From Klebsormidium nitens (taxonomy: Eukaryota; Plantae; Klebsormidiophyceae), in assembly GCA_000708835.1 (NCBI GenBank), contig DF237003.1, positions 169,275 through 233,274 on the forward strand: 64,000 bases of DNA, written 5' to 3'. The position numbers and the translations under genes were made by a program. Position 1 is the first letter of the stretch; the number at the start of each line of letters is the position of its first letter. Under the pieces are notes generated by a model. It was not told the origin of the DNA. It saw only the letters and a program-made list of their open reading frames with translations, and ran no database searches. Below are positions 7,127 through 57,100 of this stretch, piece after piece.

Positions 7127-8131
7127 GCTTCAAAACAAAGAAGAAAGGCCCAGATACTATGTTCTCTCAACGCTTGAGGGCTGCTTTCAAGGTTGATGAA
7201 GCTTTTGATCACGGACCACTTTGAGGGATTGAATCTGGGTACTACGTATGTGTAAATATCACTTCCTCGTACTCCCCCAGCCAAATGTCCACCAGACAAA
7301 TCCTCCAGGCTCCAGCTAACCAGTATGGAATGGACACTTGCAATGTAGGTCCGTACCAGTAGGTATATGAAATGCGCCCCAGCGGCCCCATGCACTGCAT
7401 GTGCATTTTCGGAAGTGGCCCCAGGACAGCCAGGCTACAGGACCCCACCGGTGACCCCGAAGGGGGGGGGGGCTTCGCCGAGCTGGCATGGCGACATACT
7501 TTCGCCGGTAGGTGCGTGACCATGTTGGTTACTGTTTCAATCATTGAACGCCGAAAGTTTGCCGAAGTTTTGACTGCAACCGTTGATTTGGTTCCGAGAC
7601 AGGCACGAGCCGTCCGATCTACTCCGACTCAATCCAAGGCGCCGGCGCGGCGAGAAGATGATACACTGAGTCCAGCTGAGCCCCGCGGTCTTCACGATGT
7701 TTTCATGCAACACTGCAATTGCATGCCCAAGCAATTTTGACCGTGCATGAGGCTGCGGCGCGGTGCACTGACTGCAACTGAGCTAGCAACATTGACTTGC
7801 TTGGCATCCGAGGGCTCAACACTCTGCTCGGGACCACGAGTGGTACGACCAGTAATTGCTGTAGTACAATGGCTAGAATGCAGCTTGAATCTATTTTTGA
7901 GTCCAAATGGCAATCTTATAAGTCCTCTGATCTTCCCATTTCTCATCCTCTCATCCTTCAATCCTCTGCCGCGCACACACCAACCCTGAACCAAATCCTA
8001 GAACCAGCACCAGCCCTCTCAGAGGTCCTTTCTGCTGCGCTACCAAAGCCAACATTCTCAGTGCGTCACTGTCTGCTGCCATCAACTTGTCTCAGCCTCG
8101 CTTGCAAACGCAAGTCCATCCAACAACAACG

Positions 8132-17863: not shown

Positions 17864-18220
17864 GGTGAAAGCTACCGGTATGCTACAAGTAATGAAGCAG
17901 CTTAAATGATCACGAAGCTGCGATTTTGTTGTTCACTTTCCGCATGCCCACAAACCGCCTCAGGATCTGCTGGCCTTCAAAGGGAGTCGTATCTCCTTCA
18001 TCCTAGCCTGATGTCTTAAACATGAGGGCTCCATCTGTGAATGCGCCAGACGACTCCGTATTCAAGCGGCCAAAGTCAAATGTCAAAAAGAGCATGCAAA
18101 TGCTTCGATCAACTTTGGCTCGAATTAGGACTTTCTGATTGACCTACTCGTCCATTGCCCCCAGGCCCTGGCTCTGGACGAACTCCGCCACTTCTTCCCC
18201 TCGGCAGCCCTCTCCGGCAG

Positions 18221-19836
18221 AGATTGAGCGCGCCCGCCAAAAAAGAGCTGACCAGAGGGGGGGGCGGCAGCTACGGCCGGTTTTTGTTGCGGAGGGGCAA
18301 TTGCCCCCGGAAGGCACCGATCCCGAGGCGGTGATTGAGATTCCGAAAAACCATCCGTGGGCGACTGCAGATTTGGACGAGGTTCCGATTGACGTGCTGC
18401 AACGGCGTTTAGATCAACGGTGAGGTGACCAAAGCCCTACCAATTAAATGACAGTATGTTGTGGTTGGGTGTCGAACGTATGCTTACTTGGGAGAGGGCT
18501 GTCGTTCCAAGTGCCGCTGTCTTCCGGTTTGCTTGATGTTAAGNNNNNNNNNNNNNNNNNNNNNNNNNNNNNNNNNNNNNNNNNNNNNNNNNNNNNNNNN
18601 NNNNNNNNNNNNNNNNNNNNNNNNNNNNNNNNNNNNNNNNNNNNNNNNNNNNNNNNNNNNNNNNNNNNNNNNNNNNNNNNNNNNNNNNNNNNNNNNNNNN
18701 NNNNNNNNNNNNNNNNNNNNNNNNNNNNNNNNNNNNNNNNNNNNNNNNNNNNNNNNNNNNNNNNNNNNNNNNNNNNNNNNNNNNNNNNNNNNNNNNNNNN
18801 NNNNNNNNNNNNNNNNNNNNNNNNNNNNNNNNNNNNNNNNNNNNNNNNNNNNNNNNNNNNNNNNNNNNNNNNNNNNNNNNNNNNNNNNNNNNNNNNNNNN
18901 NNNNNNNNNNNNNNNNNNNNNNNNNNNNNNNNNNNNNNNNNNNNNNNNNNNNNNNNNNNNNNNNNNNNNNNNNNNNNNNNNNNNNNNNNNNNNNNNNNNN
19001 NNNNNNNNNNNNNNNNNNNNNNNNNNNNNNNNNNNNNNNNNNNNNNNNNNNNNNNNNNNNNNNNNNNNNNNNNNNNNNNNNNNNNNNNNNNNNNNNNNNN
19101 NNNNNNNNNNNNNNNNNNNNNNNNNNNNNNNNNNNNNNNNNNNNNNNNNNNNNNNNNNNNNNNNNNNNNNNNNNNNNNNNNNNNNNNNNNNNNNNNNNNN
19201 NNNNNNTCCGGTTTGCTTGATGTTAAGAGCACCTTCGAACGTGCTTGAAGGGCTTCTTGATCCGTGTCAGACGGATGCTTCATTGACGGCGTGTTGTCAG
19301 GACGATCTCTCCGCTTCATACCACGAAGTTCTTCAAAAGGCAGCTTCGCAGGAGGTCAGACTCGCCTGCATTCCTCTGAAAGGAAGGACCTGACGGCTGC
19401 GAAAGAAGCGAGCTCGTCGAGCCTGATTCCGCCTTTAATCTGGACTGATTGAGCTTGGCGAGGGCTGCAACATATGATCGTTGATCGGAGTGCACTTTTC
19501 AGAACGATGTCTATGATTCCGTGAATGGCGTCCAAGTGTCTGAGACGTTTATCCAGACTTGTCCTTCCTACTTCCACCTTTATCCTCCCCGTTCTTGGCT
19601 TGTTCCCTAGCCGTTCGTATCAACAACAAAATCGAGGCAACGCCTCCATGGTCCGTCGATCGCAAGTGACGTCGCTTGACGTCACCCAGTGATCTGCCTG
19701 CAGGCGGGGCCCTCCAGACCAGGCGCACGAAACGTGGAAGCAGATTCGGCAAGATTCGGACAGGCTAGAGCAGAGCTTTGACGCCGAAGCCGATGCGGAC
19801 GCGAGCTGGGAACGACGAGAGCTACGACGACAACAA
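18221..19836 (+). CDS. Internal exons of a hypothetical protein spanning the assembly gap
   Basis: Exon 18221-18419 (EIERARQK...VLQRRLDQ, phase 2, GTGAGG) joins in phase to exon 19704-19836 (RGPPDQAHETWKQ...ELRRQQ, GTAAGG). Ends not found. Confidence 0.5.
18544..19206. other. Assembly gap (663 N) flanked by an identical 21-mer
   Basis: TCCGGTTTGCTTGATGTTAAG at 18523-18543 and 19207-19227. Confidence 0.97.
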
Positions 19837-21157
19837 GTAAGGCTGGGAGATTGTACTAAAGTTCCATTCAGAGTCCGATTTGTTTCTGGTAGACGTTGCA
19901 ATAGCGTTGCGCTCCGTTCTGCTGATTGCTTGCCGGTTCGTGTTGCATCCGTCTGTCTCTAAGGGTTTGTCCATCTTCGCTTTGTACCCTCGTCCTTAAA
20001 ATGCCTTGCTCGGACACTCTGCCCTGCTCGGATCTGACACTCATGCGGGCCTTCGGTTTATGAGGGAACTATTCTCATTTCAACGTGTAGGACTTTCTTG
20101 TGCTTCAGATAGCGCGGACAGAGCTTCTCCTTTAGCACAAAGGCTGCAAAGAAAATCAGTCCAAGGATCTCAAACAGTATTTACGGAAATGCTGTAAAGT
20201 TCGCGCTTTGGAGAGCTACCGTTCTGTTTCTCCTAAGAACGATGTTAGGCTAAAGGGTGCCGTCTTTTTCCTGTGTTGATGCGCCATATCAGCGTTCTTG
20301 CTTCGCGTCCACGATCCCAGGTTTTCCACGTATTTTCTTGGAGTTTAAGACTGTGCTCTGATTATTTGCAGGCAGGTTAGCGGCTCACCTCCTGTTGAGA
20401 AAAGCAATAGGCGGGACTGGGGCTTGGAGCTACGGCTTCCTGCGCTTTTGAGCTTCATAAAGTTTTGACACGAGATGTGCACATGTGGGCGAGAACTTCG
20501 CATTGGGTTGACTAGCCTTTCCATTGAAGGCCCAGTCTCTCTGAGGACGAGACATCGGTGAGGACGAGAGTGTTTTCCAATGGAGGGAAATCAATCATTA
20601 AGCGGAGTGTCTATATTTGCAAGCAACTTTGCGACTATCTCGAAGTTCTTCCCTTTTGGTTGCACTCAAGCCGAGTGTAGCCGCTTTGTACAGAACCATG
20701 TTGTATGGTGTGAAAACATACTCACTGATGCTTGCATGCTCGTGGGTCCAGTGACTATGGGTGCCAGAAGAATTGTGGGAACGTGTCATGCTGGCGGTGT
20801 GTAGCCGCCATGTATATCAAGCCATGCACGCGTGTAGACCGTATATCATATGCGGCCCGGTACCTTCAGTACTGACTGAGTGTGCTGCACTTATTATGTG
20901 CATGCATGAAAGATAAGGGCGGTACTTACAGTCTATTTCTTGTATATGACATGACTGCATCGATGTCCGATCCGATCGATTCTTGACTGAACTTGCTCGG
21001 TGCGCGTTCGGATGGGCAGGCCCTATGCATGACGGTAACGGCACCCGGCACTGTCGAGATTAGGGCAACGCGTTATAGCAGTATGTGAGTGACCGTGGTT
21101 AAGCATGTCAAACCGCCATGCCTACTACACATAACAAAACAGAGCGCCGTGAGCCGA

Positions 21158-32730: not shown

Positions 32731-35700
32731 TCAAGCAGTTCTTCTCCAGCCCCCCGCTTTTGTCCGAACAAACACTCGAGGCTGATCGAATGGGAAGACG
32801 TCCCACCAATTGGGGTTTTCTACCAGAAATGCAAGCACCTTCCTTGTAGCGGGCAAGAATTCTGTACCCTCTGAAGTGGGCGACGTGGATGTTAGACACA
32901 GCAAGTCGCGATCATCCATTGCTTGCATTTGTCGGGCTATTGAGTCCATTCTCTCGTACTGACATGGACCCACGTGGAAAGAATCGGTTGCCGTTTGATA
33001 CGGCACGGTCAAAACGCCTTGCCATCGTGGATCGGGACCGCACGCCATCATGCAAACGCCCCTGAAAAGAAGGTCAAGAAAGAGTCAAAGCGAGGCGACT
33101 CCTTCAAGAGAGGGCGACCAACTTGTGACGACACATCTTTATCAACTTCGGCGGCCTCGCTGGAATAGGGGTGACAGCGCCACCTGGCCACTTCGCGATA
33201 TTCAAGTCAACCATTCTGCAGCTTACGGAGGACCTCAGTCGGATGAAGGACATGACTGGAGAAAGTGACCTTAGAGACACAACAAGATGACCAGAGGAAA
33301 CGATAAAACGACCCGGAGGACAGCAGCGGCTTCCTCGAACCGCCACTCACCGCACAACCCCGTCCGGCCCGCGCGCGTTCACCGAGAACGTCGCCGGGAA
33401 CGCGCGCCCGCTCTTCGGCTCGATCCCGAGCCCCCGCACGACCGGCATCGACAAATTGCCCACCTCCCGGTCCTTCCCCGTGTTGTGCCCCAGGATGCAC
33501 GCGGTCTTCACCTCCAGGCACACGTTCGACCGGTGCAGCATCCCGACCAACGCCGCGGCCAGCGGCCACGACTGGCCCCCCATCACTGGCCCCACGGCGT
33601 CATCATACCGTTCCTCTTCTTCTTCCATCCCCCGCGCCTCGAGCTCCGACGAGCCCTCCTCGACGAGCCGCTTCCCGGGCTCTTGCGCCGGCCGCTTGCC
33701 CTTGCCCCCCGACGGCCGCTGCGCCTTCGCGGAGCTGTCGGACTCGCCGCCCCCACCGCCGCTGCCCTTGTCCTCCTCTTCGCGCGACCGTTTCCCCAGG
33801 GAGGGGCTCCGCCCCTCGTCGTCCGACCGGTAGTCGAACCGCGCCAACCGGTGCGCCTCCTCGGAAACTTCTCCACGCGGGGGGGCAACACTCCGCACAC
33901 CGCCCTCACCCCCCCTGGACATCGTTGCAGGCCGCGGCTGCGCCTCACTCTCCGGCCCCTGAGGTTCTACCTCGCTTGCGCCCAACCCCCCCGGAACAGG
34001 CATTTCCGCCTTTCCCGTCCCTTGCGAGATCCCCGCCTCCCCTCCCCGCGTCAATGCGGCAGCTGCCGTCCCCGACGGTTCGCCCGGGGCACTCCCCCTG
34101 TCGGTCCAGTTCTCTTCCCCCGGGTTGTCTTGCAGGTCAAACGCCCCCCCGGTTGCGTCTTCATCGTCCCCCTCGTCGGAGTCGTCGTAACCCCCCACAA
34201 GGTGGAGTTCGAGCGGCCCGTTGACGGGTTCCATTGAAAGGAGCATGGCCGCTATGCCGGACTTGATGCAGTCCTCCCCATCGATGTGTGCAACAGAGGT
34301 CCTGCAGAGGGGTGGAATGTGAGAACGACGATCTGGAGGGGTTGGTGTTGGTGGTCTAATGGACGCCAATTGGGTCAGGCGTAACCGTGAGAGACGCACA
34401 ATTCGAGGACGCGCGTCCTGGATGCCGCAGCGTCACTAGTATAGGAACGGTAGTAGTCAACTGCCGAAGTCAAACAAGCACTATGATTGTGATTGCAGAA
34501 TGGTCTTTCTGCAATCACTGAAGCGCGCCAGCTGCAAGGACGGAAGCTCAATGGACGCAACGGTCTTTCCTCAAATAGCACGATAAGGACACCTGTCGGC
34601 AAGTTTTACGGCAAGAGTTTTGTCTCTGGCTTTTGCAAGCGTTCACGCGAGTCTGTTTACTCCAAATGTCTGATCAGCAGCAACACACAGCACGCTGCCA
34701 ATTTCCGTAGAGCCCCCCCCAACCTGGTTGCGGCATGATAACAAGACTTGCCTGCCAGTCTCGGGATCTCTCAGCGCCACAGCTATGCACGTCGTCATCT
34801 CATCGGTCCCGACGACATCCACGAACGCCGGCAGCACCGTCGCTCGCTCGCGCTGGAACACGTAGACGGTTCGCCTGCTGGCGGAGCCGTCGATGGTGCT
34901 ATGCATCTCGGAGGTGCTCTGATTCTCGCTCCCTGTAAAGTGGCCCACAATTTTGGTTGAAAAGAAGAGCTTTCTGGGCGTCTGCTTTGAAACCAGAAAT
35001 TCAGAAACGAGGAGGTGCTCTGGTTCTCGCTCCCTGTAGAGTGGCCAACAAGTTTTGGTTGAGAAGAACTTTCTGGGCGTCTGCTTTGAAACCAGAAATG
35101 CAGAAAGGAGCAACAACGTGATCCTCAATTGGTGCATAGGAGTGAGGTATATTACGGGGGCGAAACCAAGTCTGCCTTCAATGGGGTTCGCTTGCCTGCT
35201 TGTGCCTCAACATGGCAAGCTCAACAACCAAGTAACTTGACAAGTCTGACATGGCAAGAGCCAATTGCATCGCATACGCAGACCAAATTGGCTGCCAGTA
35301 AGACTCTATTGCCTAGGACATGCCAGCACTTTATAGCATTGCAATACAGGGCGGCCAAGAAAGAACCGAGACGCCATACTCAGCCCCCTCCTTTTCAATA
35401 TCCCCCTTCCACTTGGTAACGTCCGTTCTAAAATCGCCCCTTGAAAACTGAAATCACGAACGAACGCCATACCCGATCGAGGTTGGCCGGAGTCGCCCCG
35501 CGGCTCTTGTTGCTCGGACGCTCCTTTTCCCGATCCGCTCGGCTCTGCTGCCGCAGGCCCCGCATCGCTCCTTCGCTCCGCAGCTGACTGTTCAGAAGGA
35601 CCTCTTGTGCTTGGACCACTTTCAGGACCAGAGCCCTTTGACTGCAAAGGAACCAATCGAATGCATTGTAAGTTGTTCTCCTTCTGCTTTGGCTTTTTTT

Positions 35701-42356: not shown

Positions 42357-45300
42357 ATGGCGGACATGCAGGAGGCCACACGCAATGTCTATCAGCGTGT
42401 GCGGAACTTGGATGCCGCAAATGCATCCAAGCTAGTGGGGTGGCTGCTGATGCAGGACCATGCGGACGAGGAGATGCACCGGCTAGCAATGGGCTCAGAT
42501 GCGGTCCTGATGTCGATTCTCTCGAAAGCTAGGTGGGGTTTGTGCTCTGGCTCCCGTTAGTTTTGGCTCATTGCATCCACTGGTATCTGGGAATGCTTCA
42601 CATTTTCAGATGTGACAAAGAGTGGAGATTGGGACACATGTTTGGATTACCTGCCTGGAGGTGACTGGACGTTACGTTCGTCAAGCCACTAATGTGTCCC
42701 TTTCATCAAATGTGTTTCTTTCATCTGTCAACATCAAGCTGGTGCTTGGCAAAGTCCAAAGAGGCCTGTGTGCCACACATCAGTGGCTCTTGTTTGCATT
42801 CCAACTGGTTCAAATGGTCACATAAGCAGAATTTTACAGTTGCTCATTGAATATTATGATGATTCCGTGGTTCCTGACTTCTAACCTTCACAAACAAGCT
42901 TCTCCTGGCACTGCCCCTTCCCAAAATGAGTCCGCCTGCTGTCATTTCAATGCCAACTCTAGTTGTTTTCTGACGTCCTTTCTTGGGGCTCCGATTGACG
43001 CTGACCTCGTGAAGATAGAGCCAACTTCTGTCCCCTTGTTCTTGAGCTCCTCTTGCCATTCAGATCCATCTGCTGTTATTTTTCCTCTTGTCCTCTCCCT
43101 CACTTCTTATTCCATTCATAAGCCTCCTTCCAATTCCTCATCCTGACCCAAGCACCTTTCCCACTGCAGAAAAGAGCTCGGCCTGACCCCCCAAATCAGC
43201 CCCCACCAGCTGCAATCCGGTCTTGACGCCTTCTTCTCCCAAGGTCTCAGCGGCCTCAGCCTGGACCCTTATTCCAACGGCCTCCGCAGTCCTGCCCAGT
43301 CCCCAAAGCCCTTTCAAAACGGCTACTTCCACAGCCAGAACAGCCTCCCCCCTGAGAGAAACTTCTTCCCGCACGACGAGCTGAACCACCGGCTGGCTGC
43401 CAGGCTCGGCAGCGGCAGCTTCCCCAAGGGGGGGGGGTCTTACGAGCTCAGCCGGAGCCTCGACACTGGGGGGTTGACCATCCCCAGTCTCGACATGACG
43501 TACTCGAACGGGGGCCATGGGTGGAAACCGTGCATGTATTATGCGCGAGGGTTCTGCAAGCACGGCGCGAGCTGCAAGTTTCTGCACTCCCCCGGATCCA
43601 GCCCCAGTCCACGAATGGGGGGGTTGGACCAGTATGACCAGGATGGGTTCTCTCTAGAAGATGGGACCCCCCTGGAGCATTTGGAACTCGAGTTGAGGGC
43701 GTTGTTGACGGGGAGACCCCCCGTCAGCATGGCGTTGCTGCCACAGTTATATGCGGAGCGGTTTGGGAAGGTGTTACGGGCGAAGGGGTACGGGAAGGCG
43801 GGGCTCTCGCTGACGCTGCTCCTGGAGAAGATTGGTGGGATCATCTTCCTAGAAAGGTAAGTCGACTTTCCTCTTTTGCGTTTTCGTTTGTCTGCCTCTA
43901 CTAAAACATGCCTGTTAGACCTCCTCCTGTTCTCCGAGTCTGCCTCTTTATCTTCTCTTATCTGATTATTCTCGTTTTCTCGACTCTCTGATCTCCGGCC
44001 TTTGTAAGTGAAGCAGGAAACGAAGATTGGTAACAGCGGGCCTGAAGGTCTGAAAGGACTCCGTAAGTCACAATAAGTGCCTAGAGCATGGCGTGAGTCG
44101 ATATCTGCCACACAGAAGCTCAAAAACCATTAGAAAAGCAGAGGTATAAGCGGACCAAGCGTGAGTGTCGAATCTGAAAGACGGTGCACCCAGATGCTTC
44201 GTCCAAGGGATACTGATATGTCAGCAATGAGCGGACCTCCGCTCAATTCCACCAGACCAACCCGTCCTCACTTCGAGCACACATCCTCTTCAGACAGATT
44301 CATCCTTATTTTGAGCACAGCCTTTAAGCAACCTGAATCCAACTTCCAACACATGCTTCACCGCTTGCAGGCCGGACGGATTCAAAGTGGTCTGCCTCGC
44401 AGAGGACGCCGGCCGGTACAGCATTAAGAACGGAATCGACCCGGAAGCCGAACGGAGCAACCGCCAGATTTACCTCACCTTTCCCGCCACCAGCGTGTTT
44501 GGAGAGCAGGACGTTCGGGACTACTTCAGGTGAACTTACTGACAAGCAAATGCTATTTTACTGCCTGATGACGTGAAAATCTGTGGATGGTTGTGGGCGC
44601 CATTCGAGAACTAGAACCAGATGTTTGTCCCAGGTTGAGACGCTTTAAGTCCCCTTTGAACTTGACATCCGCTTCGTATGTCGGGCTCTTCTTTTCCCAA
44701 TCCCGGAGAGGGTTCAGCCGTTGCTGATCCACTGAAAAGTCCACTGGAAAGGTCCCTTGTAGTCAGCAAAAATCAGAACAGCATGCTTTTTGTGCTATCT
44801 ACCACAAATCTTTCGCCTAACCCATGACTTTGATAAATCCAACGTCACGACTTACCTGGCCATCTTGACGTGCTTATCAACCTCGGCATCTACGTTGATA
44901 ATCATCAAAACCCCTGCAAAACGACTCTCCCAAACGGAGCACCAGAAACTCAAACCCCCCCCAAAGCAACATCTCCCCACCTTGCTGACGATTGCTATCT
45001 TTGTTGACGCAGCCGCTTCGGCAAAGTGGAGGACGTTCGGATCCCGTACCAGCAGCAGCGCATGTTTGGCTTCGTGACCTTCTCCGGCCCCGACGCTGCA
45101 CGGGCCGCCCTCGCCGCAGAGAACCCCCACCAGATTCTCGAAGCGTTCGTCCTCGTGAAGCCGTACAAGTTCAAGGGGAAGGCAGCGGAGCAGTGAGTTG
45201 CTGCTCTCGTTTGCTGACTCTAAAGTCACGGCGCTGATATCTGAAAAGAATGCCCTTCGAAACCGAAACTCCGTCTGTTCCTTCGGTATTAGTGCAAGTT

Positions 45301-48300
45301 CACTGAACCCAAAGCTGGCTGGTGCCCCTAAGCCGCAGAGTGCCACTGTATGCTGGCAATTCGTTGCTCCTTTGCATAATCAAGCTTTCGAGACTTCGTT
45401 AGTCTGAGCGCTTGTTCTTTGTTAAACCGCTTGTTCCGCTCTTCAAGACCTTTCGGATCCAGTCCCATCAGTGCTCGAACGCTCAACGTTTCAACTGCCT
45501 TCCTTCCACCTTAAACCTGAATCTTCTCCCCATCTCCGCATCTGCATGCTTCAATTATCTTCTCCCCATCTCCTCCAATCTGTTCCGTTGGTAATGGCGT
45601 TTCCCGGTTCCGTTCTCAACTCTACACCGTTCTCGTTGCCAGCCACCGGAAGATGCTCTCCCCCAAGGAAAACTACCACGTGCCGCCCAGAATCCAGCGG
45701 CAGCGCTTCCCCAACGGGCCGCAAGAGAACCTGATCAGCCCAGGTGAGGGGATTTAGCTCCTCCTCTCGCAAGCAAGGTTCTCGCATCGGGATTCGTTCA
45801 TCCTTCAACCAATGCTCGATTTGCGCGGACCTGAAAGGTTATCATCGAGCGCTCGGCCCCTCCTTCCAAAGGAGACCTCACATACACGTCTGAAACTTGC
45901 AATGACGAAACGTTCAGAGGACGCTTTTCGCATCTCCTTTCAACGACGAAACGTCCACCCCGTTGCTTCCGCGTAAAATCGCACCCATCGCATGATGCAA
46001 TTTTCCGGGCATTGTTTCACAGGCTCTGGTTCGGGCTCCGACTCGCCCTCCAGCCTGAACTACCACAGCTACGAGACGGACGAGGCCCTCAACCGGCGGC
46101 TACAGGAGGAAGAAGCGGAGCGCGAGAACGAGCGCCGCCGGGCTGCCGCGCTCGCGATCGGGGACGCGCAGCGGAGGCGGCTTGAGGCCGAGGCCAGCAT
46201 GCACCGGGCGGAGTCGCTGCAGAACCGGAGGCTAGGTAAGTATTGGGGTTACCCAATCTGGAAGTATCGTATTGCTCTAAGAGCTCGGCGAGATTTCCCA
46301 GTTCGCACTAGATTTCCCATTTCCTTGGCCTGACGTATACGACCATATACGTTGACAAGAAAGAATTCGATAGTACCTAGTAGCAAAGAGAGATATTCTG
46401 GTTAATCAGGAGTAAGGATTAAATGAGTTGCTCCGTACCCGAACCCACCTTGACCCCACCCGTGCTCGTGGAACTCCTCAGTACTACTAGGACTCAGTAC
46501 TAATAACCTTTTACTTTCAATACTGATTGTAGAAAAACCAGCGTATCTTAAATCTCCTATGAATTGACCCTGCAGAGGGCAGCGAATTTCAGCTGGAGCT
46601 GAACACGTTTCAGTCGGACAACCCGTTCGGATACCTGCTGAACGATAACGAGACCGAGTCGGAGGACAGCGACAAGCGGAGCCATGGCGAAAACCACCAG
46701 AGGTAAGAATGATTTGGGAAGTATCTCTTGTCTCTTTTCGCGTAATGCCCGGAGACCGGTCAATGTAAGCGAAGAACGAAGGGAGAAGGAAACGGAAAGG
46801 AAGCAGAATTAAAAGGAAGCTCCATTCTGGAATCTTGAATTGAGGAATCAGAGGATTTTGGCACACTTCTGCATCGAGCAGAGTTCCGAGCTTTGAAACG
46901 TGACTCTTGTACCCAACCTGTGGGTTTCTAATCTCTTCGACTGCCGTCTCTCGATGTTTGAGTACGTTTCAACGACAGTCCGGATTCGTTGAGTCTCAGC
47001 CGCAATGGCATCGACTCAAATTTTTATCTATCTCGTAACGGCTTAGCTAAGACTCCAAGCTCCGAGAATCTCAAACGGCGAACCCACAATCGAGCCGTTG
47101 ATTGTCAAAATCGATGGTTGCGCGTTAATCCCCCGAAAAGCGTACAACTAGGCAAAAGAGTCTGCATGACAAAAACAACGTGTTGGTTCTAGATGAAGTT
47201 TCCAGGGATCCCCTCTTTACCCGGCGCGCTTTTCTCGTGCAGCCACGGCCTGTGGCCCGAGCTCGAGGAGGGCCTCGGGGGATCCCCCGGGCACAAGTGG
47301 GACATCCCGCGGAAGAACGGCCTCAACGGAAGCCTCAACGGCGTCAACGTGGCGCGCTCGGGGTCGCCCCTCCAAAACGGGTCCTCCCTGTCCGGGATGA
47401 CGGACCATGACCTCACCTGCTGCATCTGCTTAGGTAAGCGAGCGGGCGGGAAGGTGGTTGTGTGTCATCGGCGCCTGGTTACGAATACTTCGTAGTTGGT
47501 CGCTAGGGTTCATTGAAAGCGCTTGTCAAGGAAAGCTACTGTTCGAGCGTGCATGATCAGCGCCTATGTCTGTCGGCTGGATTCGTTGCTTTGGCGAGCG
47601 TGTTTACTGCTTTGAAGGACCAGTGTTCATTGACTAATTCAGACATGGCGGGCCCCTTTGGAAGCGTCGCTGATCAGCCGTTTGACTTTTGAATTGTCGT
47701 ATATCCGCTCCAAAGTCTTGGTAACGTCGCCTAGACTGTCAATGTGGGCTATTACGAAAGGCTGCGATGAACCATTTCCTCGGATTTCTGACTGGCGGCG
47801 TCATGTTAAACTAGTTTGCGACATGCGAACAACGTGAGTCGGCTAATCAGCCGTCCTTTTACCTTGCCTGCAGAGTACTACGAGGAGCCCATCGGCCTGG
47901 ATTGCTCGCACACGTTCTGCGTGAAGTGCATTTCTCAGGTGAGTTTGGTTGCTGACGTTTCAGGAGGGAGCGCACAGTCGATGTCTAAGGCCCCCTCCCT
48001 GTTGTGGTCAGTCATGGTACGGGGGTTGCTTTCAATATTGTCAGTGCCCAGGTCTGTGTTCGCACGGAATATTGTTGAACCCTGCGCTGATGTGCACGGA
48101 GCAGCACGCAAGCTGTTTAGCTCCTATTAAGGAGCTGTTTAAGCGGGTTGATTTGACCCATCTGATCGAACATTTTGTTATTAACCTATCTAAACCAACC
48201 CTCCGCCCACGTACAATACTCCCAGCTTGTTAACTTTCACAAACGCCTACGCCCTACCTTTCTTTATGTTCCGGCCTTTGTTTCTCAGTAAGTGTCGGTG

Positions 48301-48686
48301 CCTTGAAGCCAAATGTTTAATCAAGCCCGAGTCTTTGCGGCAGGCAGAGCATAGAATGCCCTCTGACGCTGCTTGTTACTTAACTGTTAGTTAATTGTTA
48401 GCTGATTGTTACCTCGTAGTCCCTAAAACTTGCAAGGGGGCTCCTAAAGGTTAAGAATCAGCTGCTTCACTCAGAGGAGCAAGAAAAAATGTCTCCTTAA
48501 TTCTCCCTCCAGGTGATCAAAGCTACCCGCGATGAGTGCCCCATGTGCCGTCAAAAGCTGAGCCCGGCCATTCTCCGGTTCCTCGAGACGCGCGACCCTC
48601 ACTGGACTGCGCCCCACGCACACCTGAAGAGCATGTTCCGCTACCAGGGCCAGGTCGTGCAGCAACCGGGGCTACCAGTTTGGTGA
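42357..48686 (+). CDS. CCCH zinc finger + OST-HTH/LOTUS + RRM RNA-binding protein with C-terminal C3HC4 RING (10 exons, 690 aa)
   Basis: Exons 42357-42532, 43170-43856, 44371-44529, 45013-45192, 45643-45743, 46023-46235, 46576-46702, 47243-47433, 47874-47938 and 48513-48686 are in phase (2073 nt). N-terminus [30 protein letters not shown] resembles the Arabidopsis C3H46/53/55 group. CCCH: [24 protein letters not shown]: RQIYLTFP...[12 protein letters not shown]: [39 protein letters not shown]. Confidence 0.9.
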
Positions 48687-51100
48687 TTGCATAACACGAG
48701 GCAGTAATTACAATTGAAAGGTTGTTGTTTGGAGTTGAAAAGGGGGGCGGGTGATCGTGGGTTACAAGCCCACCGGTGGTATTGAAGGGGGTTTGTTGGG
48801 TTGGCGCAGTCCCACATTTGAGGTGCGATTTGTCTGTGGTGGTTTTTGTTGAGCCGCGACACTTATTTCTCAGGTGAAAGCCTCCAAAATAGGAATACAG
48901 GTGACAGTCGAAGTTGTGACATACGATTGTATTTAGCCAAGATACCAGACTCTGACGAGAAAGCGCTTAGATCTGACCGAAAACAACACGAACCGACTCG
49001 CGCGAAATTGGATTGCGAGGTCCCCTGTTTTCTGGGGAAGTAGGTGCAGTGGGACGTTTGGCACCTTGGCATTGACGTGGCGAACCGGATCTAAGCAGAA
49101 TACGGGTACAATGACTAGACAGAAACCATTAAAGAAAGGGCAGCTCTTGCGCTCGGGCTAGTCCCGAGCTCTGAGTGATGCTACCATTATTTCAATAGTA
49201 TTCAATAGGCACTAGGACGCTTAGGCTAGAACAGTCGAGTGGATCTTCGAATAATCCGTTCAAGTAGGAGAAACCAATTCGCTGTAGCAGCTACAAAGGT
49301 CGTGGCAAAGCAGCGGAGCGGTTGATTTGCGTGTTGTTAGCATATGCTTCTGCGAACATTTCTGTAGAAGCGAGATTTTGATGTCGACGGTTGGTGACAA
49401 GCTAAGGAGATCTAGTTACAGTGAGCAGCAAACTTAAGTACAGCGCAATGGCAGTGCAGAGTTATTTCAAACTTTGTTTGCAGCATATGATAATCTTGAG
49501 AAAGTTTTGTTGTCAACGTAGGCACCTCTAATCAAACACACCCCGACTTTGTCTTTTAGAGTGAACCTGTCTCCCCTCGTTTCTCGTATAACATGGCCGC
49601 CGATGTAGTCCTTGGCAGGTTTCAATCCAAGAGTGTGCCTTCAGAGCAGCGGGCGCAACTGCAGACCGCCATGCAAGCCAGCGCACTCAAGCGGCACCAT
49701 CTCGCACGACGTTGCTGCTACTAGCTAGAGGTGCGATTGGTGAGTCCTGATGTGAACCCGAATTTAAGACCTGCATGTATGTGACAGTGGTGGCGACTTA
49801 AACTGGTCACAATCTGAAGCAGTGTCAGCCGCCGCACCTTATGTCAACTAACTTGAAGTGGCTGACAACAGTCTGCACATGCGGTGTGGCAAATGATTTG
49901 GAATATGCATTTGTATGATAGTCGAAGGGAGCCCGAGACGCGGTCCGATCCAATCCAGCCCGAGGCTGTATGTACTATAATAACTTATACGACAGCAAGC
50001 ATTGCTCCGTTAATTAACGGTACAGTCTGCATGAGAAACTAATTGCAAGAATTGAATATATGATGAGTCACTTGAGCGCTAATGATGACGGGACGTCGGC
50101 CTCTATAGTCGAAACCTTGTTAATGCATGTGTATTAAACGTACTAATATAATGGTCGGCCCACATGTGCGATCATTTTCGGAGTCCGCTCGCGACTCTAC
50201 ACCGTCGTCTTCATTGCTACGCACCGTCGCCGGGTGCCACGTACAATGCCGGCCTCTACAGATGAGCCCGACTAACTGCGCGGCCGGCAGCGCTGCGTGA
50301 TGCATGTCGGATCACTTCAATGTTAATCATGATCTAATTATAAGTTTGCATGATTGCTTGAAGAGCTGCGCGGCATCGATCGTGTAAGCGCGACGTACAC
50401 GATTCTACGTCAATCAGAATGTTTTATTTATTCTGCAAACGTAAGCCTGCAGATAACTTAGCACATAATAGTTGACTGCGTCGAATCGTCCGGAAAGAAT
50501 TGTTGTTAGTAATCACATGGATCGTGCTTAAGTCGTACACGACCGTAACGGCGCAGCAGCCGCGCTTAAGCTATAGCCACCGCGTGACAGGACGTTCACA
50601 ACTTCCCGACACACGCGTACATGTTACTACGCTGACCCGACGGTACCCTCACTATAGCTATACCGTCCGACTGAGGGCACTCGCCAGGCATGCTGGCCGG
50701 GCCGCCGCGGTAGCGGGGCCCTCTACTTCTGTATGCGGGCCACTGCATGTACGATCTTTCAGAGTGGTGGTTCCACGAGCAATTCCAATGAGGCGCCATG
50801 TATCGCGCAGCGCCAAATGGGTGCAACATGCATGCAATCACCTTCACAAGCCGAGGGCCATCATGGCATAGGACCTCGGGCATGTCACTGACACACGTGC
50901 CAGAAAATCCGAACCAGAGCACAGTGCCAGACAAAACAACGGCAGAAGGCCGATCGAGCATATGCTCTGTCAATACTGCAAAGTGCGTTTGTTCCCAGCC
51001 TACCGCCACGTGTCTCCATTTACTTTGGTCAAATGATGGGCGATTTGGATTTCCACGTCAATACTGCTTCTGATCGAGTGACAAGATGGGCTCACCGCTT

Positions 51101-54100: not shown

Positions 54101-57100
54101 CATATATATTACAAGTCAATTCTGAAGGACAGCGCGTTCTGCTCTTCGAATCGAAGGATGCTTACAAAGGCACAAACTCGACGCGAAAATGCCCCCGACA
54201 AGATCTGCCGTAGCAAGCAGAGGGTCAGAGGAAAGGCTGCTACACGCATCATTCTCCCGTGCAGCTGGCCAGTCAGCAAACCGATCAGTTCCGAACCAGC
54301 TTGCTTCTTTTTCCGTATTTCTTTCAAAGCAGCATGTGGCTGGGCACCGCGAAAGAAAGAATACCAAGAGGCCGACGTAACTCTTAAACGAGTAAGATTC
54401 GTACGTGCATGATAATGGCGGGTTCCCGCTAGGTTTGGGAATGAGTACCGGGATGAGCTGCCGCGTATTGGATCCCCGACGTTCCGCCCAAGAAGCCCTG
54501 CAGAGGATTGGCTGACGTTTGAGGGTTCGTGGATAAGAAACATTTAATCTTATCTAATACTTTATTTTTTGTAATATCAAAGACGAAGTAAAAATATTCC
54601 TCTCCCAAAGGGCATTGGGATGAAATCAGGTTCGAAATTTCCTTTTCTTTTTATATATTCTAGGGTTTTGAAACAACCTACGGATCTGTTAAGAGAGGGC
54701 GTCCACATACGTATCTGATTGACTATAAGAGACGACTGCACCGCGCGCCTCTCGTTCGTCGTGTCGCCAACAAAGGTTTCTGGTGAGTTTTCCCCCAAGC
54801 ATACTCACAGGAGACGAGCGCTGACGTTTTCGACCGACCAATCGACACGCTCTTTGTGGACCATCTCAAAGAACGCTGATGATGTCAAGTTCTCACCGTT
54901 TCAAAGGGCCATAAAGATGTAAAGCTTTTGATCGGCGGAAGCGAGAATTGCAAGTCTTTGAAAGGACAGCCGTCATAGATGATTTAGCTCACCCCCATAG
55001 CGACTTCCTTCACAGCTTCTACAGCCTAAAGGTTCCCAACAAAGGAACGTACACTTGAAGAAGGAGTTTCAAAACAGCAAGGACGCGAAGCATTTCATGA
55101 GGGCGTTTATCTCTGCTAACTGAATTTTCGGAGGTTTGATCACAAAACCCTCGCTAAAACTCACTTGTGCCACGAGCGTGACTTTCTCCAGTCCCAGCGC
55201 CACTACTAGCCCTTCCAAACCGTCCAAAATGTCAGTCGGGCGGTAGCCGAACGTCTTGGGGCTTGGTTTGTCGGACAGTCCGAAGCCGGGCCAGTCGAAG
55301 CCGATTGCCCGGTGACCTGTTTCCAAACAGGGTTACAAACATGGTCGTTGTAAGTCCTGCGTGTAACGACAGGCTTCCGAAGGTTGCAAGAGAAGACGCT
55401 GCCATCTGCCAAACTTTGTTGTTTTGCAGAGACTCAAAACCCAGCCTCCTCTTCAAAAAACCGGCCTTCGTAAGGTTGCCTTTCGACTTTGCTGATCATT
55501 CAAGGAAGATTTAACCGCTAGCAGAGAAGGCTCCTTGGAATCATGCTCTAGGTTGTCATCACTTAGCAGAGGTGTTGAAAAGCTCGGCAAGTTGTCCTGA
55601 TTTTTTTTCCTTTTCCTTTTCGTTGTTTTCTCGTAAGACCGCTTCAGCTTTCATCAGATTCTTATCCAGACCAGCCTTCCTTGACTTTGAAGACTTCAAA
55701 TCAGCATTTCGTCCACGACTACAGTCCCCATGACAAACTTACATCTTCATCATGTCGCTGCACAGATACAACAGTTACTTGAAGTGCACAATTACACGCA
55801 AGAATCACCAACTTGGATATCTGACAGCACCTCAATTCCTGAAGGGAACATACGCACCGTTTGTAAGTTCCATCAGAATGGATTACGAGTTCTTGCCGCG
55901 CAGGCTTACCCGCTTCGCAAAGCAGACGGATCACTTCCCGGAAGGAATACGAGTGCGCTGGAAGGCCAGGCAACAGGAGGATAGTGCTTTTCGGAGGTCC
56001 TGTTTCAGGACCTTCGTCAACAACAAACCTGCAAGTTGTGAAAAGGAAACGAAGTGGTTAGCCCTTCTCTGCCGTGATTGGTAGCCAAGAACGCTGCTCC
56101 GTCCGGGCAACCTTCACATTCTGTTCAACTTCATGAACAACGGACTGGGTAGACTTCTGGTGAACTTTGGTGATGACTCCTATGTTAATAGTGAACGATG
56201 ACAGCTTCAAAGCAGCGAGGAGTAGTGGCGGGACTCACGCCCTCCGCGCCCTTCCTCAAATTTCCTTCCTGTCTATCAGGCTTCTTGAGCGCGTCGAAGA
56301 TTGGGACCACTTTGCCAACATTCAGCATTGCAGAGAGCGCATAGAGCTCAGTATATCGAATTCAAAATGTCCTGTTCTCAGTGTCAGTAAATGAAACTTT
56401 GAGATACTCCTTTCCATCTTGCAAAGGGAAGCGATAATCTTGCGTCATGGGATCACTATTCTAGGTTCTCCTTCGTCTCAAGTTTTAGGCGACTCAGGCT
56501 TATGCGTTCGTACATGAGAGTATCAATCTAACATGAGATACACCCTCCGCCCTGCTGTTATGTTGTTCAGTCAATACCGTTGAAAGCTATAATTGACTTG
56601 CTGGACTGGTCCATTTCAATCAGTCCTTGACAGGAAGCGATGTGATCCTTACCACTCATATCCCGCAACAGTCACCAACTTCCCTCTCTTCTCCCAGGCC
56701 TCCGTCAATGGACTCTTCCGGATGCCCTTCCAACCTACAGATGAAAATGATGTTAAAGGGTCATTCTAAAATGGTCCATGGATTGGTACCTGCCTCCTGC
56801 TTCTTCTGTGCTCGAAAAGAAGGCGACTGATGCTTTGCAAGGGGGACTACTGGCAGATAGCTGCCTTTAACCTGTATTTGCAGATTTGCGAACCTCCTTT
56901 TCGAATTATGAGACATAGGGGGTAGTGTGAGACCAAAACATCTTGCGTTCTTCAATTTTGGTTGGGTATCTTGCATCGAGCGATTCAACCAGGCCAACTA
57001 TTCAGGAGTCTGGGAGAGGGACAAGAAGCGTAAGAGGAACATACTGTGTTGTGAACATCGACACTGCGGTCCACCCGAAACACGTGAATGTGGCCTGCAG

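What the first reader, a model, noticed from the sequence alone, without database searches (positions are those of the whole stretch)
42357..48686. CCCH-LOTUS-RRM RNA-binding protein fused to a RING: candidate RNA-guided E3 ligase
Seen: after the plant-type N-terminal domain, CCCH finger, LOTUS-like segment (LELELRALL...[13 protein letters not shown]...LTLLLEKI) and RRM, five more in-phase exons add a charged helix and a complete C3HC4 RING split over three exons. Established: the Arabidopsis C3H18/46/53/55 group has CCCH, LOTUS and/or RRM domains and, to my knowledge, no RING. RNA-binding RING ligases such as Roquin, MEX3 and Makorin couple mRNA binding to ubiquitination. Inference: an ancestral or lineage-specific streptophyte RNA-binding ubiquitin ligase, possibly acting in RNP granules. 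It faces away from NTAN1, another proteolysis-pathway gene, which may be coincidence.
Basis: partly seen in the sequence, partly recalled or inferred. Interest (0 to 1): 0.75.

Follow-up and report, generated by a model that had tools for sequence, protein, structure and literature searches.

The report
Algal RNA-binding protein with RING
This is a real, expressed and already annotated gene of the alga Klebsormidium nitens: an RNA-granule-type protein (family of Arabidopsis C3H18) that still carries a ubiquitin-ligase RING finger, a feature shared with other algae, a moss, a clubmoss, ferns and conifers and absent from every flowering-plant relative I sampled.

Summary
Window 42357-48686 (+) is one 10-exon gene with canonical GT-AG introns. 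Transcript contigs from four studies carry every junction, and one contig per run joins the RNA-binding exons to the RING exons.

The product is 100% identical to the public 690-aa protein GAQ80459.1 / A0A0U9HKC2 of Klebsormidium nitens, so the gene model is not new. Its domains, in order:
- PABC_AtC3H46
- CCCH
- LOTUS (by predicted fold)
- RRM
- charged helix
- TRIM21-like C3HC4 RING

The same layout occurs in Closterium, Sphagnum, Diphasiastrum, several ferns, Welwitschia and Cryptomeria. All eight zinc ligands, the RING intron positions and a C-terminal Trp are conserved. None of 118 other hits, nearly all flowering-plant C3H18/46/53/55-like proteins, has a RING. The RING is therefore ancestral in streptophytes and was probably lost later; it is not specific to Klebsormidium.

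Ligase activity and RNA targeting are untested. I found no paper on this architecture. A different CCCH-RRM-LOTUS-RING family was catalogued in 2010, and its moss member PpLDCP3 was knocked out in 2024.

Earlier scan notes list other RNA-binding-plus-RING fusions in this genome, none at this locus.

Verdict: real, moderately interesting, a new variant of a known kind.

The parts
42357..42532 (+). Exon 1: start codon and the N-terminal PABC_AtC3H46 domain (aa 3-66, which runs into exon 2)
   Evidence: Pfam hit at 2.4e-22 on the exon and 81.5 bits on the whole protein. The GT donor is at 42533. The last 30 letters of this exon are the loose end of the transcript contigs just before exon 2.
43170..43856 (+). 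Exon 2: low-complexity linker, one CCCH finger (C-x8-C-x5-C-x3-H, 43531-43587) and the first two thirds of the LOTUS domain (from about 43672)
   Evidence: zf-CCCH at 1.9e-7. The best PDB sequence hits are CPSF4 zinc fingers. Junction 43856/44371 is present in all four runs.
44371..44529 (+). Exon 3: end of the LOTUS domain (beta hairpin, [13 protein letters not shown]) and the first RRM strand (RNP2, IYLTF)
   Evidence: AF2 model of aa 218-304 has mean pLDDT 80.5. The 25 best Foldseek PDB hits are all LOTUS domains of Oskar, TDRD5, TDRD7 and MARF1.
45013..45192 (+). Exon 4: RRM core with RNP1 (RMFGFVTF)
   Evidence: RRM_1 at 2e-6 on the exon and 36 bits on the whole protein.
45643..45743 (+). 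Exon 5: short linker, largely an insertion in Klebsormidium relative to its orthologues
   Evidence: Junctions 45192/45643 and 45743/46023 are present in all four runs. It appears as an insertion in alignment A1.
46023..46235 (+). Exon 6: Ser-rich stretch and the charged helix ([14 protein letters not shown]...)
   Evidence: The ELERRRLAEL-type segment is conserved across the family. Junctions.
46576..46702 (+). Exon 7: conserved FGYLL motif and an acidic stretch
   Evidence: F523 and L526 are invariant in A1. Junctions.
47243..47433 (+). Exon 8: linker and the first RING zinc-ligand pair (C607, C610). It ends in phase 1, two residues after C610.
   Evidence: Adiantum has an intron at the same position and phase.
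47874..47938 (+). Exon 9: RING ligands C622, H624, C627, C630
   Evidence: zf-C3HC4_4 at 2.1e-7 on the ORF that holds this exon, window:47816-48127. The phase-0 intron after CISQ is conserved in Adiantum and Closterium.
48513..48686 (+). Exon 10: last RING pair (C642, C645), R646, a 44-residue tail ending in an invariant Trp, and the stop codon
   Evidence: all 8 ligands and the final W are invariant in 17 orthologues. Junction 47938/48513 is present in all four runs at high depth, but with only 23-30 letters on the shorter side.

Best explanation
This locus is the Klebsormidium nitens gene for the public protein GAQ80459.1 (690 aa). It is one spliced, expressed transcript.

The protein is the algal orthologue of the plant C3H18/46-type RNA-binding proteins, which in Arabidopsis are components of mRNP granules. 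It keeps a C-terminal TRIM21-like C3HC4 RING that flowering-plant members lack.

Most likely mechanism, all inferred:
- The CCCH finger and the RRM bind mRNA.
- The LOTUS domain binds structured RNA or a DEAD-box helicase.
- The N-terminal PABC-like domain docks partner peptides.
- Together these place the protein on mRNPs.
- There the RING recruits a ubiquitin-charged E2 and ubiquitinates neighbouring mRNP proteins, or the protein itself. This would tune mRNA fate or granule turnover.

Shown here: gene structure, transcription, domain content, orthology, and the age and conservation of the RING. Inferred: RNA binding, E2 recruitment, substrates and granule localisation in the alga.
For: - One contig per run (1912-2675 nt; four runs from four studies under two organism labels) joins exon 1 through exon 9 across canonical GT-AG joints. 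The last joint is present in all four runs.
- tblastn of P0151 (GAQ80459.1) against the window is 96.7-100% identical in the ten exon-spanning pieces; every value below 100% belongs to a piece that blast ran on into an intron.
- Pfam on P0151: PABC_AtC3H46 81.5 bits, RRM_1 36, zf-CCCH 29.6. Six RING models score above their cut-offs.
- The LOTUS fold is supported by AF2 plus Foldseek.
- The RING is 5.6e-13 to the TRIM21 RING over 48 ungapped residues. Its fold neighbours are active E3 RINGs solved with their E2s.
- By inspection, the residues usually needed for E2 contact are present: Ile609, Ile631, Pro643 and Arg646 after the last Cys.
- All eight ligands are invariant in 17 orthologues from Klebsormidium to gymnosperms, which argues for selection on a working zinc-binding RING.
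- RING intron positions and phases are shared with Adiantum and Closterium.
- AtC3H18 forms mRNA-dependent granules associated with P-bodies and stress granules (PMC9335048).
Against: - No experiment on this protein or on any RING-bearing orthologue turned up in my paper searches.
- The residue after the last Cys is Arg only in some orthologues; it is Gln, Ala or Ser in others.
- Pfam OST-HTH does not detect the LOTUS domain in the Klebsormidium protein.
- The PABC-like domain has no sequence match among solved structures, and I did not fold it.
- Flowering plants do without the RING, so it is not essential to the family's core role.
- The runs are only guessed to be RNA by the tool, although contigs that lack the introns can hardly be anything else.
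Confidence: 0.6

Rival explanations
1. The RING is structural rather than catalytic. It would act as a dimerisation or partner-binding module, like BARD1, BMI1 or MDMX, and the protein would be only an RNA-binding scaffold.
For: - The position after the last Cys is not conserved as Arg/Lys.
- Flowering-plant homologues work without a RING.
- Fold neighbours include RING1B-BMI1 heterodimers.
Against: - The closest sequence match is the active TRIM21 RING.
- The E2-contact Ile and Pro positions are present.
- Inactive RINGs usually sit beside an active partner, and nothing here points to one.
Confidence: 0.2
2. The RING acts mainly on the protein itself. Self-ubiquitination would keep the level of a dose-sensitive granule scaffold low, rather than targeting other mRNP proteins.
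For: AtC3H18 granule assembly and pollen toxicity depend strongly on dose (PMC9335048). A built-in degradation module would fit an ancestral solution that flowering plants later replaced with other controls.
Against: This is purely an inference. There are no half-life or ubiquitination data for any member.
Confidence: 0.12
3. The RING exons belong to a separate transcript, or the model is an annotation fusion of two genes.
For: An ATG at 47193 opens an ORF that runs into the first RING exon. The transcript contigs break at exon 9, so no single contig runs from exon 1 to the stop.
Against: - Single contigs run from exon 1 into exon 9, which holds four of the eight RING ligands, in four runs.
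- All phases are continuous.
- The acceptor in use is at 47243, downstream of that ATG.
- The same fused architecture is found in at least six other lineages.
Confidence: 0.02

Closest known systems
Arabidopsis AtC3H18 (At2g05160) and its Brassica and lily homologues (BcMF30a/c, LlC3H18)
   Same: Same family: N-terminal PABC_AtC3H46 domain, one CCCH finger, LOTUS, RRM, charged helix and FGYLL motif, all alignable. The published role is as an mRNP-granule component (PMC9335048).
   Different: They have no RING and no C-terminal Trp. In the quick tree the flowering-plant C3H18-like clade sits next to RING-bearing gymnosperm proteins.
RING-bearing orthologues in public databases: Closterium sp. 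[quoted passage not shown]
   Same: Identical domain order, invariant RING ligands and an invariant final Trp. RING introns are shared where I could check them, in Adiantum and Closterium.
   Different: Only 34-40% identical overall. The Klebsormidium LOTUS domain lacks the LTESQRH loop and escapes Pfam. All are uncharacterised or named automatically.
[quoted passage not shown] 2010
   Same: The same four domain types in one plant protein, and the same idea of a LOTUS RNA-binding protein with a RING (PMC2848206 supplement; bioRxiv 10.1101/2024.09.17.613224).
   Different: The domain order differs (RRM before LOTUS) and there is no PABC_AtC3H46 domain. The PpLDCP3 authors report no detectable sequence similarity to At2g05160. 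I did not compare the sequences myself.
TRIM21 RING, and animal RNA-binding RING ligases (Roquin, MEX3, Makorin)
   Same: The RING is TRIM21-like in sequence and fold. The concept is shared: RNA-binding modules coupled to a RING.
   Different: No B-box (so not a TRIM), no ROQ domain, no KH domain and no Makorin-type multi-CCCH array. The resemblance is in logic only, not in family membership.

Membership tests
Plant C3H18/46-type proteins (PABC_AtC3H46 family) | N-terminal PABC_AtC3H46 domain (PF23182) | tested here: met
   81.5 bits against a cut-off of 27, aa 3-66; 2.4e-22 on exon 1 alone.
Plant C3H18/46-type proteins (PABC_AtC3H46 family) | A single C-x8-C-x5-C-x3-H finger followed by an RRM | tested here: met
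   zf-CCCH 29.6 bits (cut-off 20.5) at aa 179-200. RRM_1 36 bits (cut-off 20.7) at aa 333-379.
Plant C3H18/46-type proteins (PABC_AtC3H46 family) | Full-length alignability and grouping with family members | tested here: met
   phmmer with exon 2 and a profile search recover the family. The alignment has 78 invariant columns. Tree.
LOTUS / OST-HTH domain | Match to the Pfam OST-HTH model (PF12872) | tested here: not met
   No hit at E <= 0.1 on P0151. In the aligned region, orthologues score 16.6-25.9 bits against a cut-off of 23.8.
LOTUS / OST-HTH domain | Winged-helix LOTUS fold | tested here: met
   AF2 of aa 218-304 has mean pLDDT 80.5. The top 25 Foldseek PDB hits are all LOTUS domains of Oskar, TDRD5, TDRD7 and MARF1, with TM 0.58-0.76 and probability 1.00. 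Caveat: this is a predicted model built on a homologue alignment.
RING-HC (C3HC4) E3 ligase domain | Eight zinc ligands with RING spacing, and Pfam RING models above their cut-offs | tested here: met
   C607-x2-C610-x11-C622-x-H624-x2-C627-x2-C630-x11-C642-x2-C645. zf-C3HC4_4 scores 33.5 (cut-off 30), zf-RING_2 32 (27.3) and zf-C3HC4 31.2 (21). The ligands are invariant in 17 orthologues.
RING-HC (C3HC4) E3 ligase domain | E2-dependent ubiquitin transfer | not testable with these tools
   Only indirect evidence: TRIM21-like sequence, and Ile609, Pro643 and Arg646 present by inspection.
TRIM (RBCC) proteins | RING followed by B-box and coiled coil | tested here: not met
   No B-box model hits. 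The RING is C-terminal and the charged helix lies upstream of it.
Roquin / MEX3 / Makorin RNA-binding RING ligases | ROQ domain, KH domains, or a Makorin-type array of CCCH fingers around the RING | tested here: not met
   None of these domains appears in the Pfam scan of P0151.
PpLDCP3-type CCCH-RRM-LOTUS-RING proteins | Domain order CCCH, RRM, LOTUS, RING | tested here: not met
   Here the order is PABC, CCCH, LOTUS, RRM, RING. I did not test sequence relatedness to PpLDCP3 because I held no sequence of it.

The most novel reading that the evidence does not exclude
The plant C3H18/46 mRNP-granule protein family began in streptophyte algae as a self-contained RNA-tethered ubiquitin ligase with a TRIM21-like RING and an invariant C-terminal Trp. 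Flowering plants lost the ligase module, apparently in both of their clades, and one clade lost LOTUS as well. The RING and the terminal Trp would then form an undescribed control module for RNP granules in algae, bryophytes, ferns and gymnosperms.
Probability: 0.45. Interest if true: 0.55.

Novelty: new variant of a known kind. Interest (0 to 1): 0.42.

Why it matters
Work on C3H18-type proteins has been done only in flowering plants, where they appear as pure RNA-binding granule components. The ancestral form carries a conserved RING with conserved intron positions, retained from Klebsormidium to conifers. This suggests that ubiquitination was originally built into this granule protein.

Three hypotheses become testable:
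- The family's ancestral job includes ubiquitin signalling on mRNPs.
- Flowering plants moved that job to another protein or dropped it.
- The invariant terminal Trp is a functional motif.

Ferns (Ceratopteris) and mosses (Sphagnum is the one moss seen here) are candidate systems for these tests. This is an evolutionary and mechanistic lead, not a new class of system.

Tried and rejected
- Joined protein: I built and searched no joined spliced protein. Exons were searched one by one by reference. For whole-protein work I used the public protein P0151, which listing of cluster members returned and which matches every exon.
- Word-index search with the Klebsormidium RING region: nothing found. 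This is a sensitivity limit, not absence. The same search from a fern-like orthologue found only ferns.
- Profile word search: capped at 8000 candidates, and it missed the RING-bearing proteins that the exhaustive phmmer had found. Its 118 RING-less hits are therefore a sample, not a census. Early-branching flowering plants, hornworts, Chara and Coleochaete were not specifically covered.
- Rfam over the whole window: no match.
- PDB sequence search of the last exon alone and of the PABC region: nothing useful.
- The look-up of encoding contigs for the Sphagnum and Diphasiastrum proteins: not on record, so I checked intron conservation only in Adiantum and Closterium.
- Separate RING gene starting at ATG 47193: rejected, because the transcripts use the acceptor at 47243 and continue from exon 7.
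- Functional link to the neighbouring NTAN1 gene: no evidence for one. It lies about 7 kb away on the other strand.
Full report
**What is in the sequence**

On the + strand, an ATG at 42357 opens a reading frame that continues through ten exons to a TGA ending at 48686. Every intron has GT-AG ends and the phases fit. The exons are:
- 42357-42532
- 43170-43856
- 44371-44529
- 45013-45192
- 45643-45743
- 46023-46235
- 46576-46702
- 47243-47433
- 47874-47938
- 48513-48686

They total 2073 nt, which is 690 codons plus the stop.

Pfam on single exons gave PABC_AtC3H46 (2.4e-22), zf-CCCH (1.9e-7), RRM_1 (2e-6) and zf-C3HC4_4 (2.1e-7).

Six exons, not five, follow the RRM. The LOTUS segment needed a fold test, described below. 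Rfam found nothing in the window.

**Is it one transcript?**

The look-up of sequencing runs listed 20 runs from 7 studies that hold 26-50% of the stretch's sampled words. That is about the exon share of the 6.3-kb span.

I laid contigs of four runs, from four studies and under two organism labels, on 43000-48999:
- All eight internal junctions appeared in every run with GT..AG ends. They sit exactly at the coordinates I had derived from the sequence.
- In each run one contig of 1912-2675 nt carries exon 1 (as a loose end that matches its last 30 letters), exons 2-8, and most or all of exon 9 (64-71 letters). That joins the RNA-binding exons to four of the eight RING ligands.
- The last junction, 47938/48513, lies on a second high-depth contig. 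Only 23-30 letters lie on its shorter side.
- The contigs break there because a low-depth contig (47913-48539) retains the last intron.

The tool only guesses that these runs are RNA, but contigs that lack the introns are spliced transcripts. The separate-transcript reading is therefore close to excluded.

**Identity**

An exhaustive phmmer of exon 2 against 1.84 billion cluster representatives gave 525 hits. The cluster of the top hit contains GAQ80459.1 / A0A0U9HKC2, 'zinc finger protein [Klebsormidium nitens]', 690 aa.

tblastn of that protein (P0151) on the window is 96.7-100% identical in the ten exon-spanning pieces, and every value below 100% belongs to a piece that blast ran on into an intron. 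So the window is K. nitens, and the full CCCH-to-RING model is already public. Earlier notes of this scan had named the organism. I confirmed it in this way.

**Domains of the whole protein**

Pfam on P0151:

| Domain | Residues | Score (cut-off) |
|---|---|---|
| PABC_AtC3H46 | 3-66 | 81.5 bits (27) |
| zf-CCCH | 179-200 | 29.6 bits (20.5) |
| RRM_1 | 333-379 | 36 bits (20.7) |
| RING | 607-645 | six models above their cut-offs |

OST-HTH/LOTUS was not detected at E <= 0.1. Orthologues score 16.6-25.9 bits in the aligned region, against a cut-off of 23.8. The Klebsormidium copy lacks a seven-residue loop.

I folded aa 218-304 with an alignment of 23 homologous segments and obtained mean pLDDT 80.5. 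Foldseek against the PDB returned LOTUS domains of Oskar, TDRD5, TDRD7 and MARF1 as the 25 best hits, with TM 0.58-0.76. The LOTUS call therefore stands by fold.

The RING matches the TRIM21 RING at 5.6e-13 over 48 ungapped residues. Its predicted fold (core pLDDT 81-88) is nearest to RNF125, TRIM21, RNF8, RNF168 and RNF4 RINGs solved with their E2s.

By inspection and general knowledge of RING-E2 contacts, the usual contact positions are present: Ile609, Ile631, Pro643 and Arg646 after the last Cys.

**Is the architecture found elsewhere?**

Among the best 150 representatives, six carry the same order PABC-CCCH-(LOTUS)-RRM-RING:
- Pteridium aquilinum
- Diphasiastrum complanatum
- Sphagnum magellanicum
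- Welwitschia mirabilis
- one unnamed transcript

A search from the fern-like RING added Adiantum and Ceratopteris proteins. UniRef names one of them 'RING-type E3 ubiquitin transferase'. Closterium sp. NIES-67, a zygnematophyte, has a 1312-aa member with a C-terminal RING.

In an alignment of 17 RING-plus-tail segments, all eight ligands are invariant. So is a Trp that is the very last residue in 15 of the 17.

The two introns inside the RING are shared. The phase-1 intron two residues after the second Cys, and the phase-0 intron after C-I-x-x, occur in Klebsormidium and in Adiantum. Closterium has the same middle-exon boundaries. This points to a single ancient origin of the RING module rather than repeated fusions.

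**Flowering plants**

Of the 120 best hits of a profile search, 118 have no RING, either by precomputed Pfam or by pattern. The named ones are C3H18/22/23/46/53/55-like proteins of flowering plants, plus one partial Taxus protein. The large ESM Atlas clusters of the family also show only PABC, RRM and CCCH.

I built a quick maximum-likelihood tree with the RING columns removed and Klebsormidium as outgroup. RING-bearing proteins form a grade: Closterium, ferns, clubmoss, moss and gymnosperms. The RING-less proteins fall into three groups:
- Riccia
- a flowering-plant C3H18-like clade, next to the gymnosperm RING proteins
- a flowering-plant C3H46/53/55 clade, which has also lost LOTUS

At least three changes are needed. 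With both algal lineages carrying the RING, an ancestral RING with later losses is the simplest reading.

This conclusion rests on a sample. The Riccia locus has no intact RING exons within 6 kb downstream, and only a weak possible remnant.

**Literature**

Five full-text searches found no paper that describes a RING in the C3H18/46 family.
- Anantharaman, Zhang and Aravind 2010 (PMC2848206) list CCCH+OST-HTH+RRM for At2g05160 without a RING. [quoted passage not shown]
- A moss member of that other family, PpLDCP3, has been knocked out. Its authors report no detectable similarity to At2g05160.
- AtC3H18 forms mRNA-dependent granules associated with P-bodies and stress granules, and it is dose-sensitive.
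- A lily C3H18 relocates to cytoplasmic foci (abstract shown).

**Most likely mechanism**

The steps below are inferred. The RNA-binding modules and the PABC-like domain place the protein on mRNPs. The RING then recruits a charged E2 and ubiquitinates mRNP proteins or the protein itself.

The rivals are a non-catalytic RING and a purely self-directed RING. None of these can be told apart without biochemistry.

**Verdict**

One gene, no RING in flowering plants, and an ancestral origin all hold. Ligase function is untested.
- The architecture already sits unremarked in public databases, and its domain set has a published analogue.

It is best classed as a new variant of a known kind, and it is of moderate interest.

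Noticed in passing
window 48681-48683 (last codon, Trp690): The final residue is a Trp that is invariant in all 17 RING-bearing orthologues aligned, and it is the very C-terminus in 15 of them. The roughly 40-residue tail before it is variable, and AF2 predicts the tail as disordered (pLDDT below 50). I have no explanation for it.
   Followed up: partly
window 47913-48539: All four runs hold a low-depth contig that retains the last intron (depth 4-10, against 117-350 for the spliced contig). Read through, it would end the protein before the last Cys pair of the RING. Cryptomeria isoform X2 also lacks that pair, and one Pteridium isoform lacks the final Trp. RING-dead isoforms may be a recurring feature.
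   Followed up: no
window 33350-35206 (- strand): Two ORF pieces match Pfam N_Asn_amidohyd (NTAN1) at 2.9e-19 and 9.5e-11. I saw no sign of a functional link.
   Followed up: partly
proteins P0201, P0205, P0197, P0234, P0216, P0272 and others: The flowering-plant C3H46/53/55/22/23 clade has a Gln/Ala-rich low-complexity stretch in place of the LOTUS domain. That clade has therefore lost both LOTUS and RING.
   Followed up: partly
L001:10537-10608 (Riccia sorocarpa locus): A different frame of the last annotated exon reads CPDQFMEPVPSWISDPFRIQCILR. It loosely resembles the RING core (C..F.DP...C.H.FC.QCILK) but most ligands are gone. It may be a decayed RING remnant, but the match is weak (tblastn E 6.9).
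   Followed up: partly
window 42348 and upstream: In one run (X5) the transcript contig extends 946 nt upstream of exon 2, far more than the 176 nt of coding exon 1. An acceptor-like site (ccttgcag) lies 9 nt before the ATG. The 5' UTR is probably long and may be spliced.
   Followed up: no
window 18001-20000: A 2-kb block with G+C 0.36, against about 0.50 elsewhere in the window. I did not examine it.
   Followed up: no
protein P0001 (Logan contig, 108 aa): A fragment 98% identical to aa 181-288, with two substitutions, comes from a 14.9-kb genomic contig of another sample. It is probably a second Klebsormidium strain or species carrying the same gene.
   Followed up: no
window 55072-55332 (- strand): An ORF piece matches the alpha/beta hydrolase fold (Abhydrolase_1, 1.5e-5, 25.2 bits, just under Pfam's 25.8 cut-off). 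It is probably an exon of a downstream gene.
   Followed up: no
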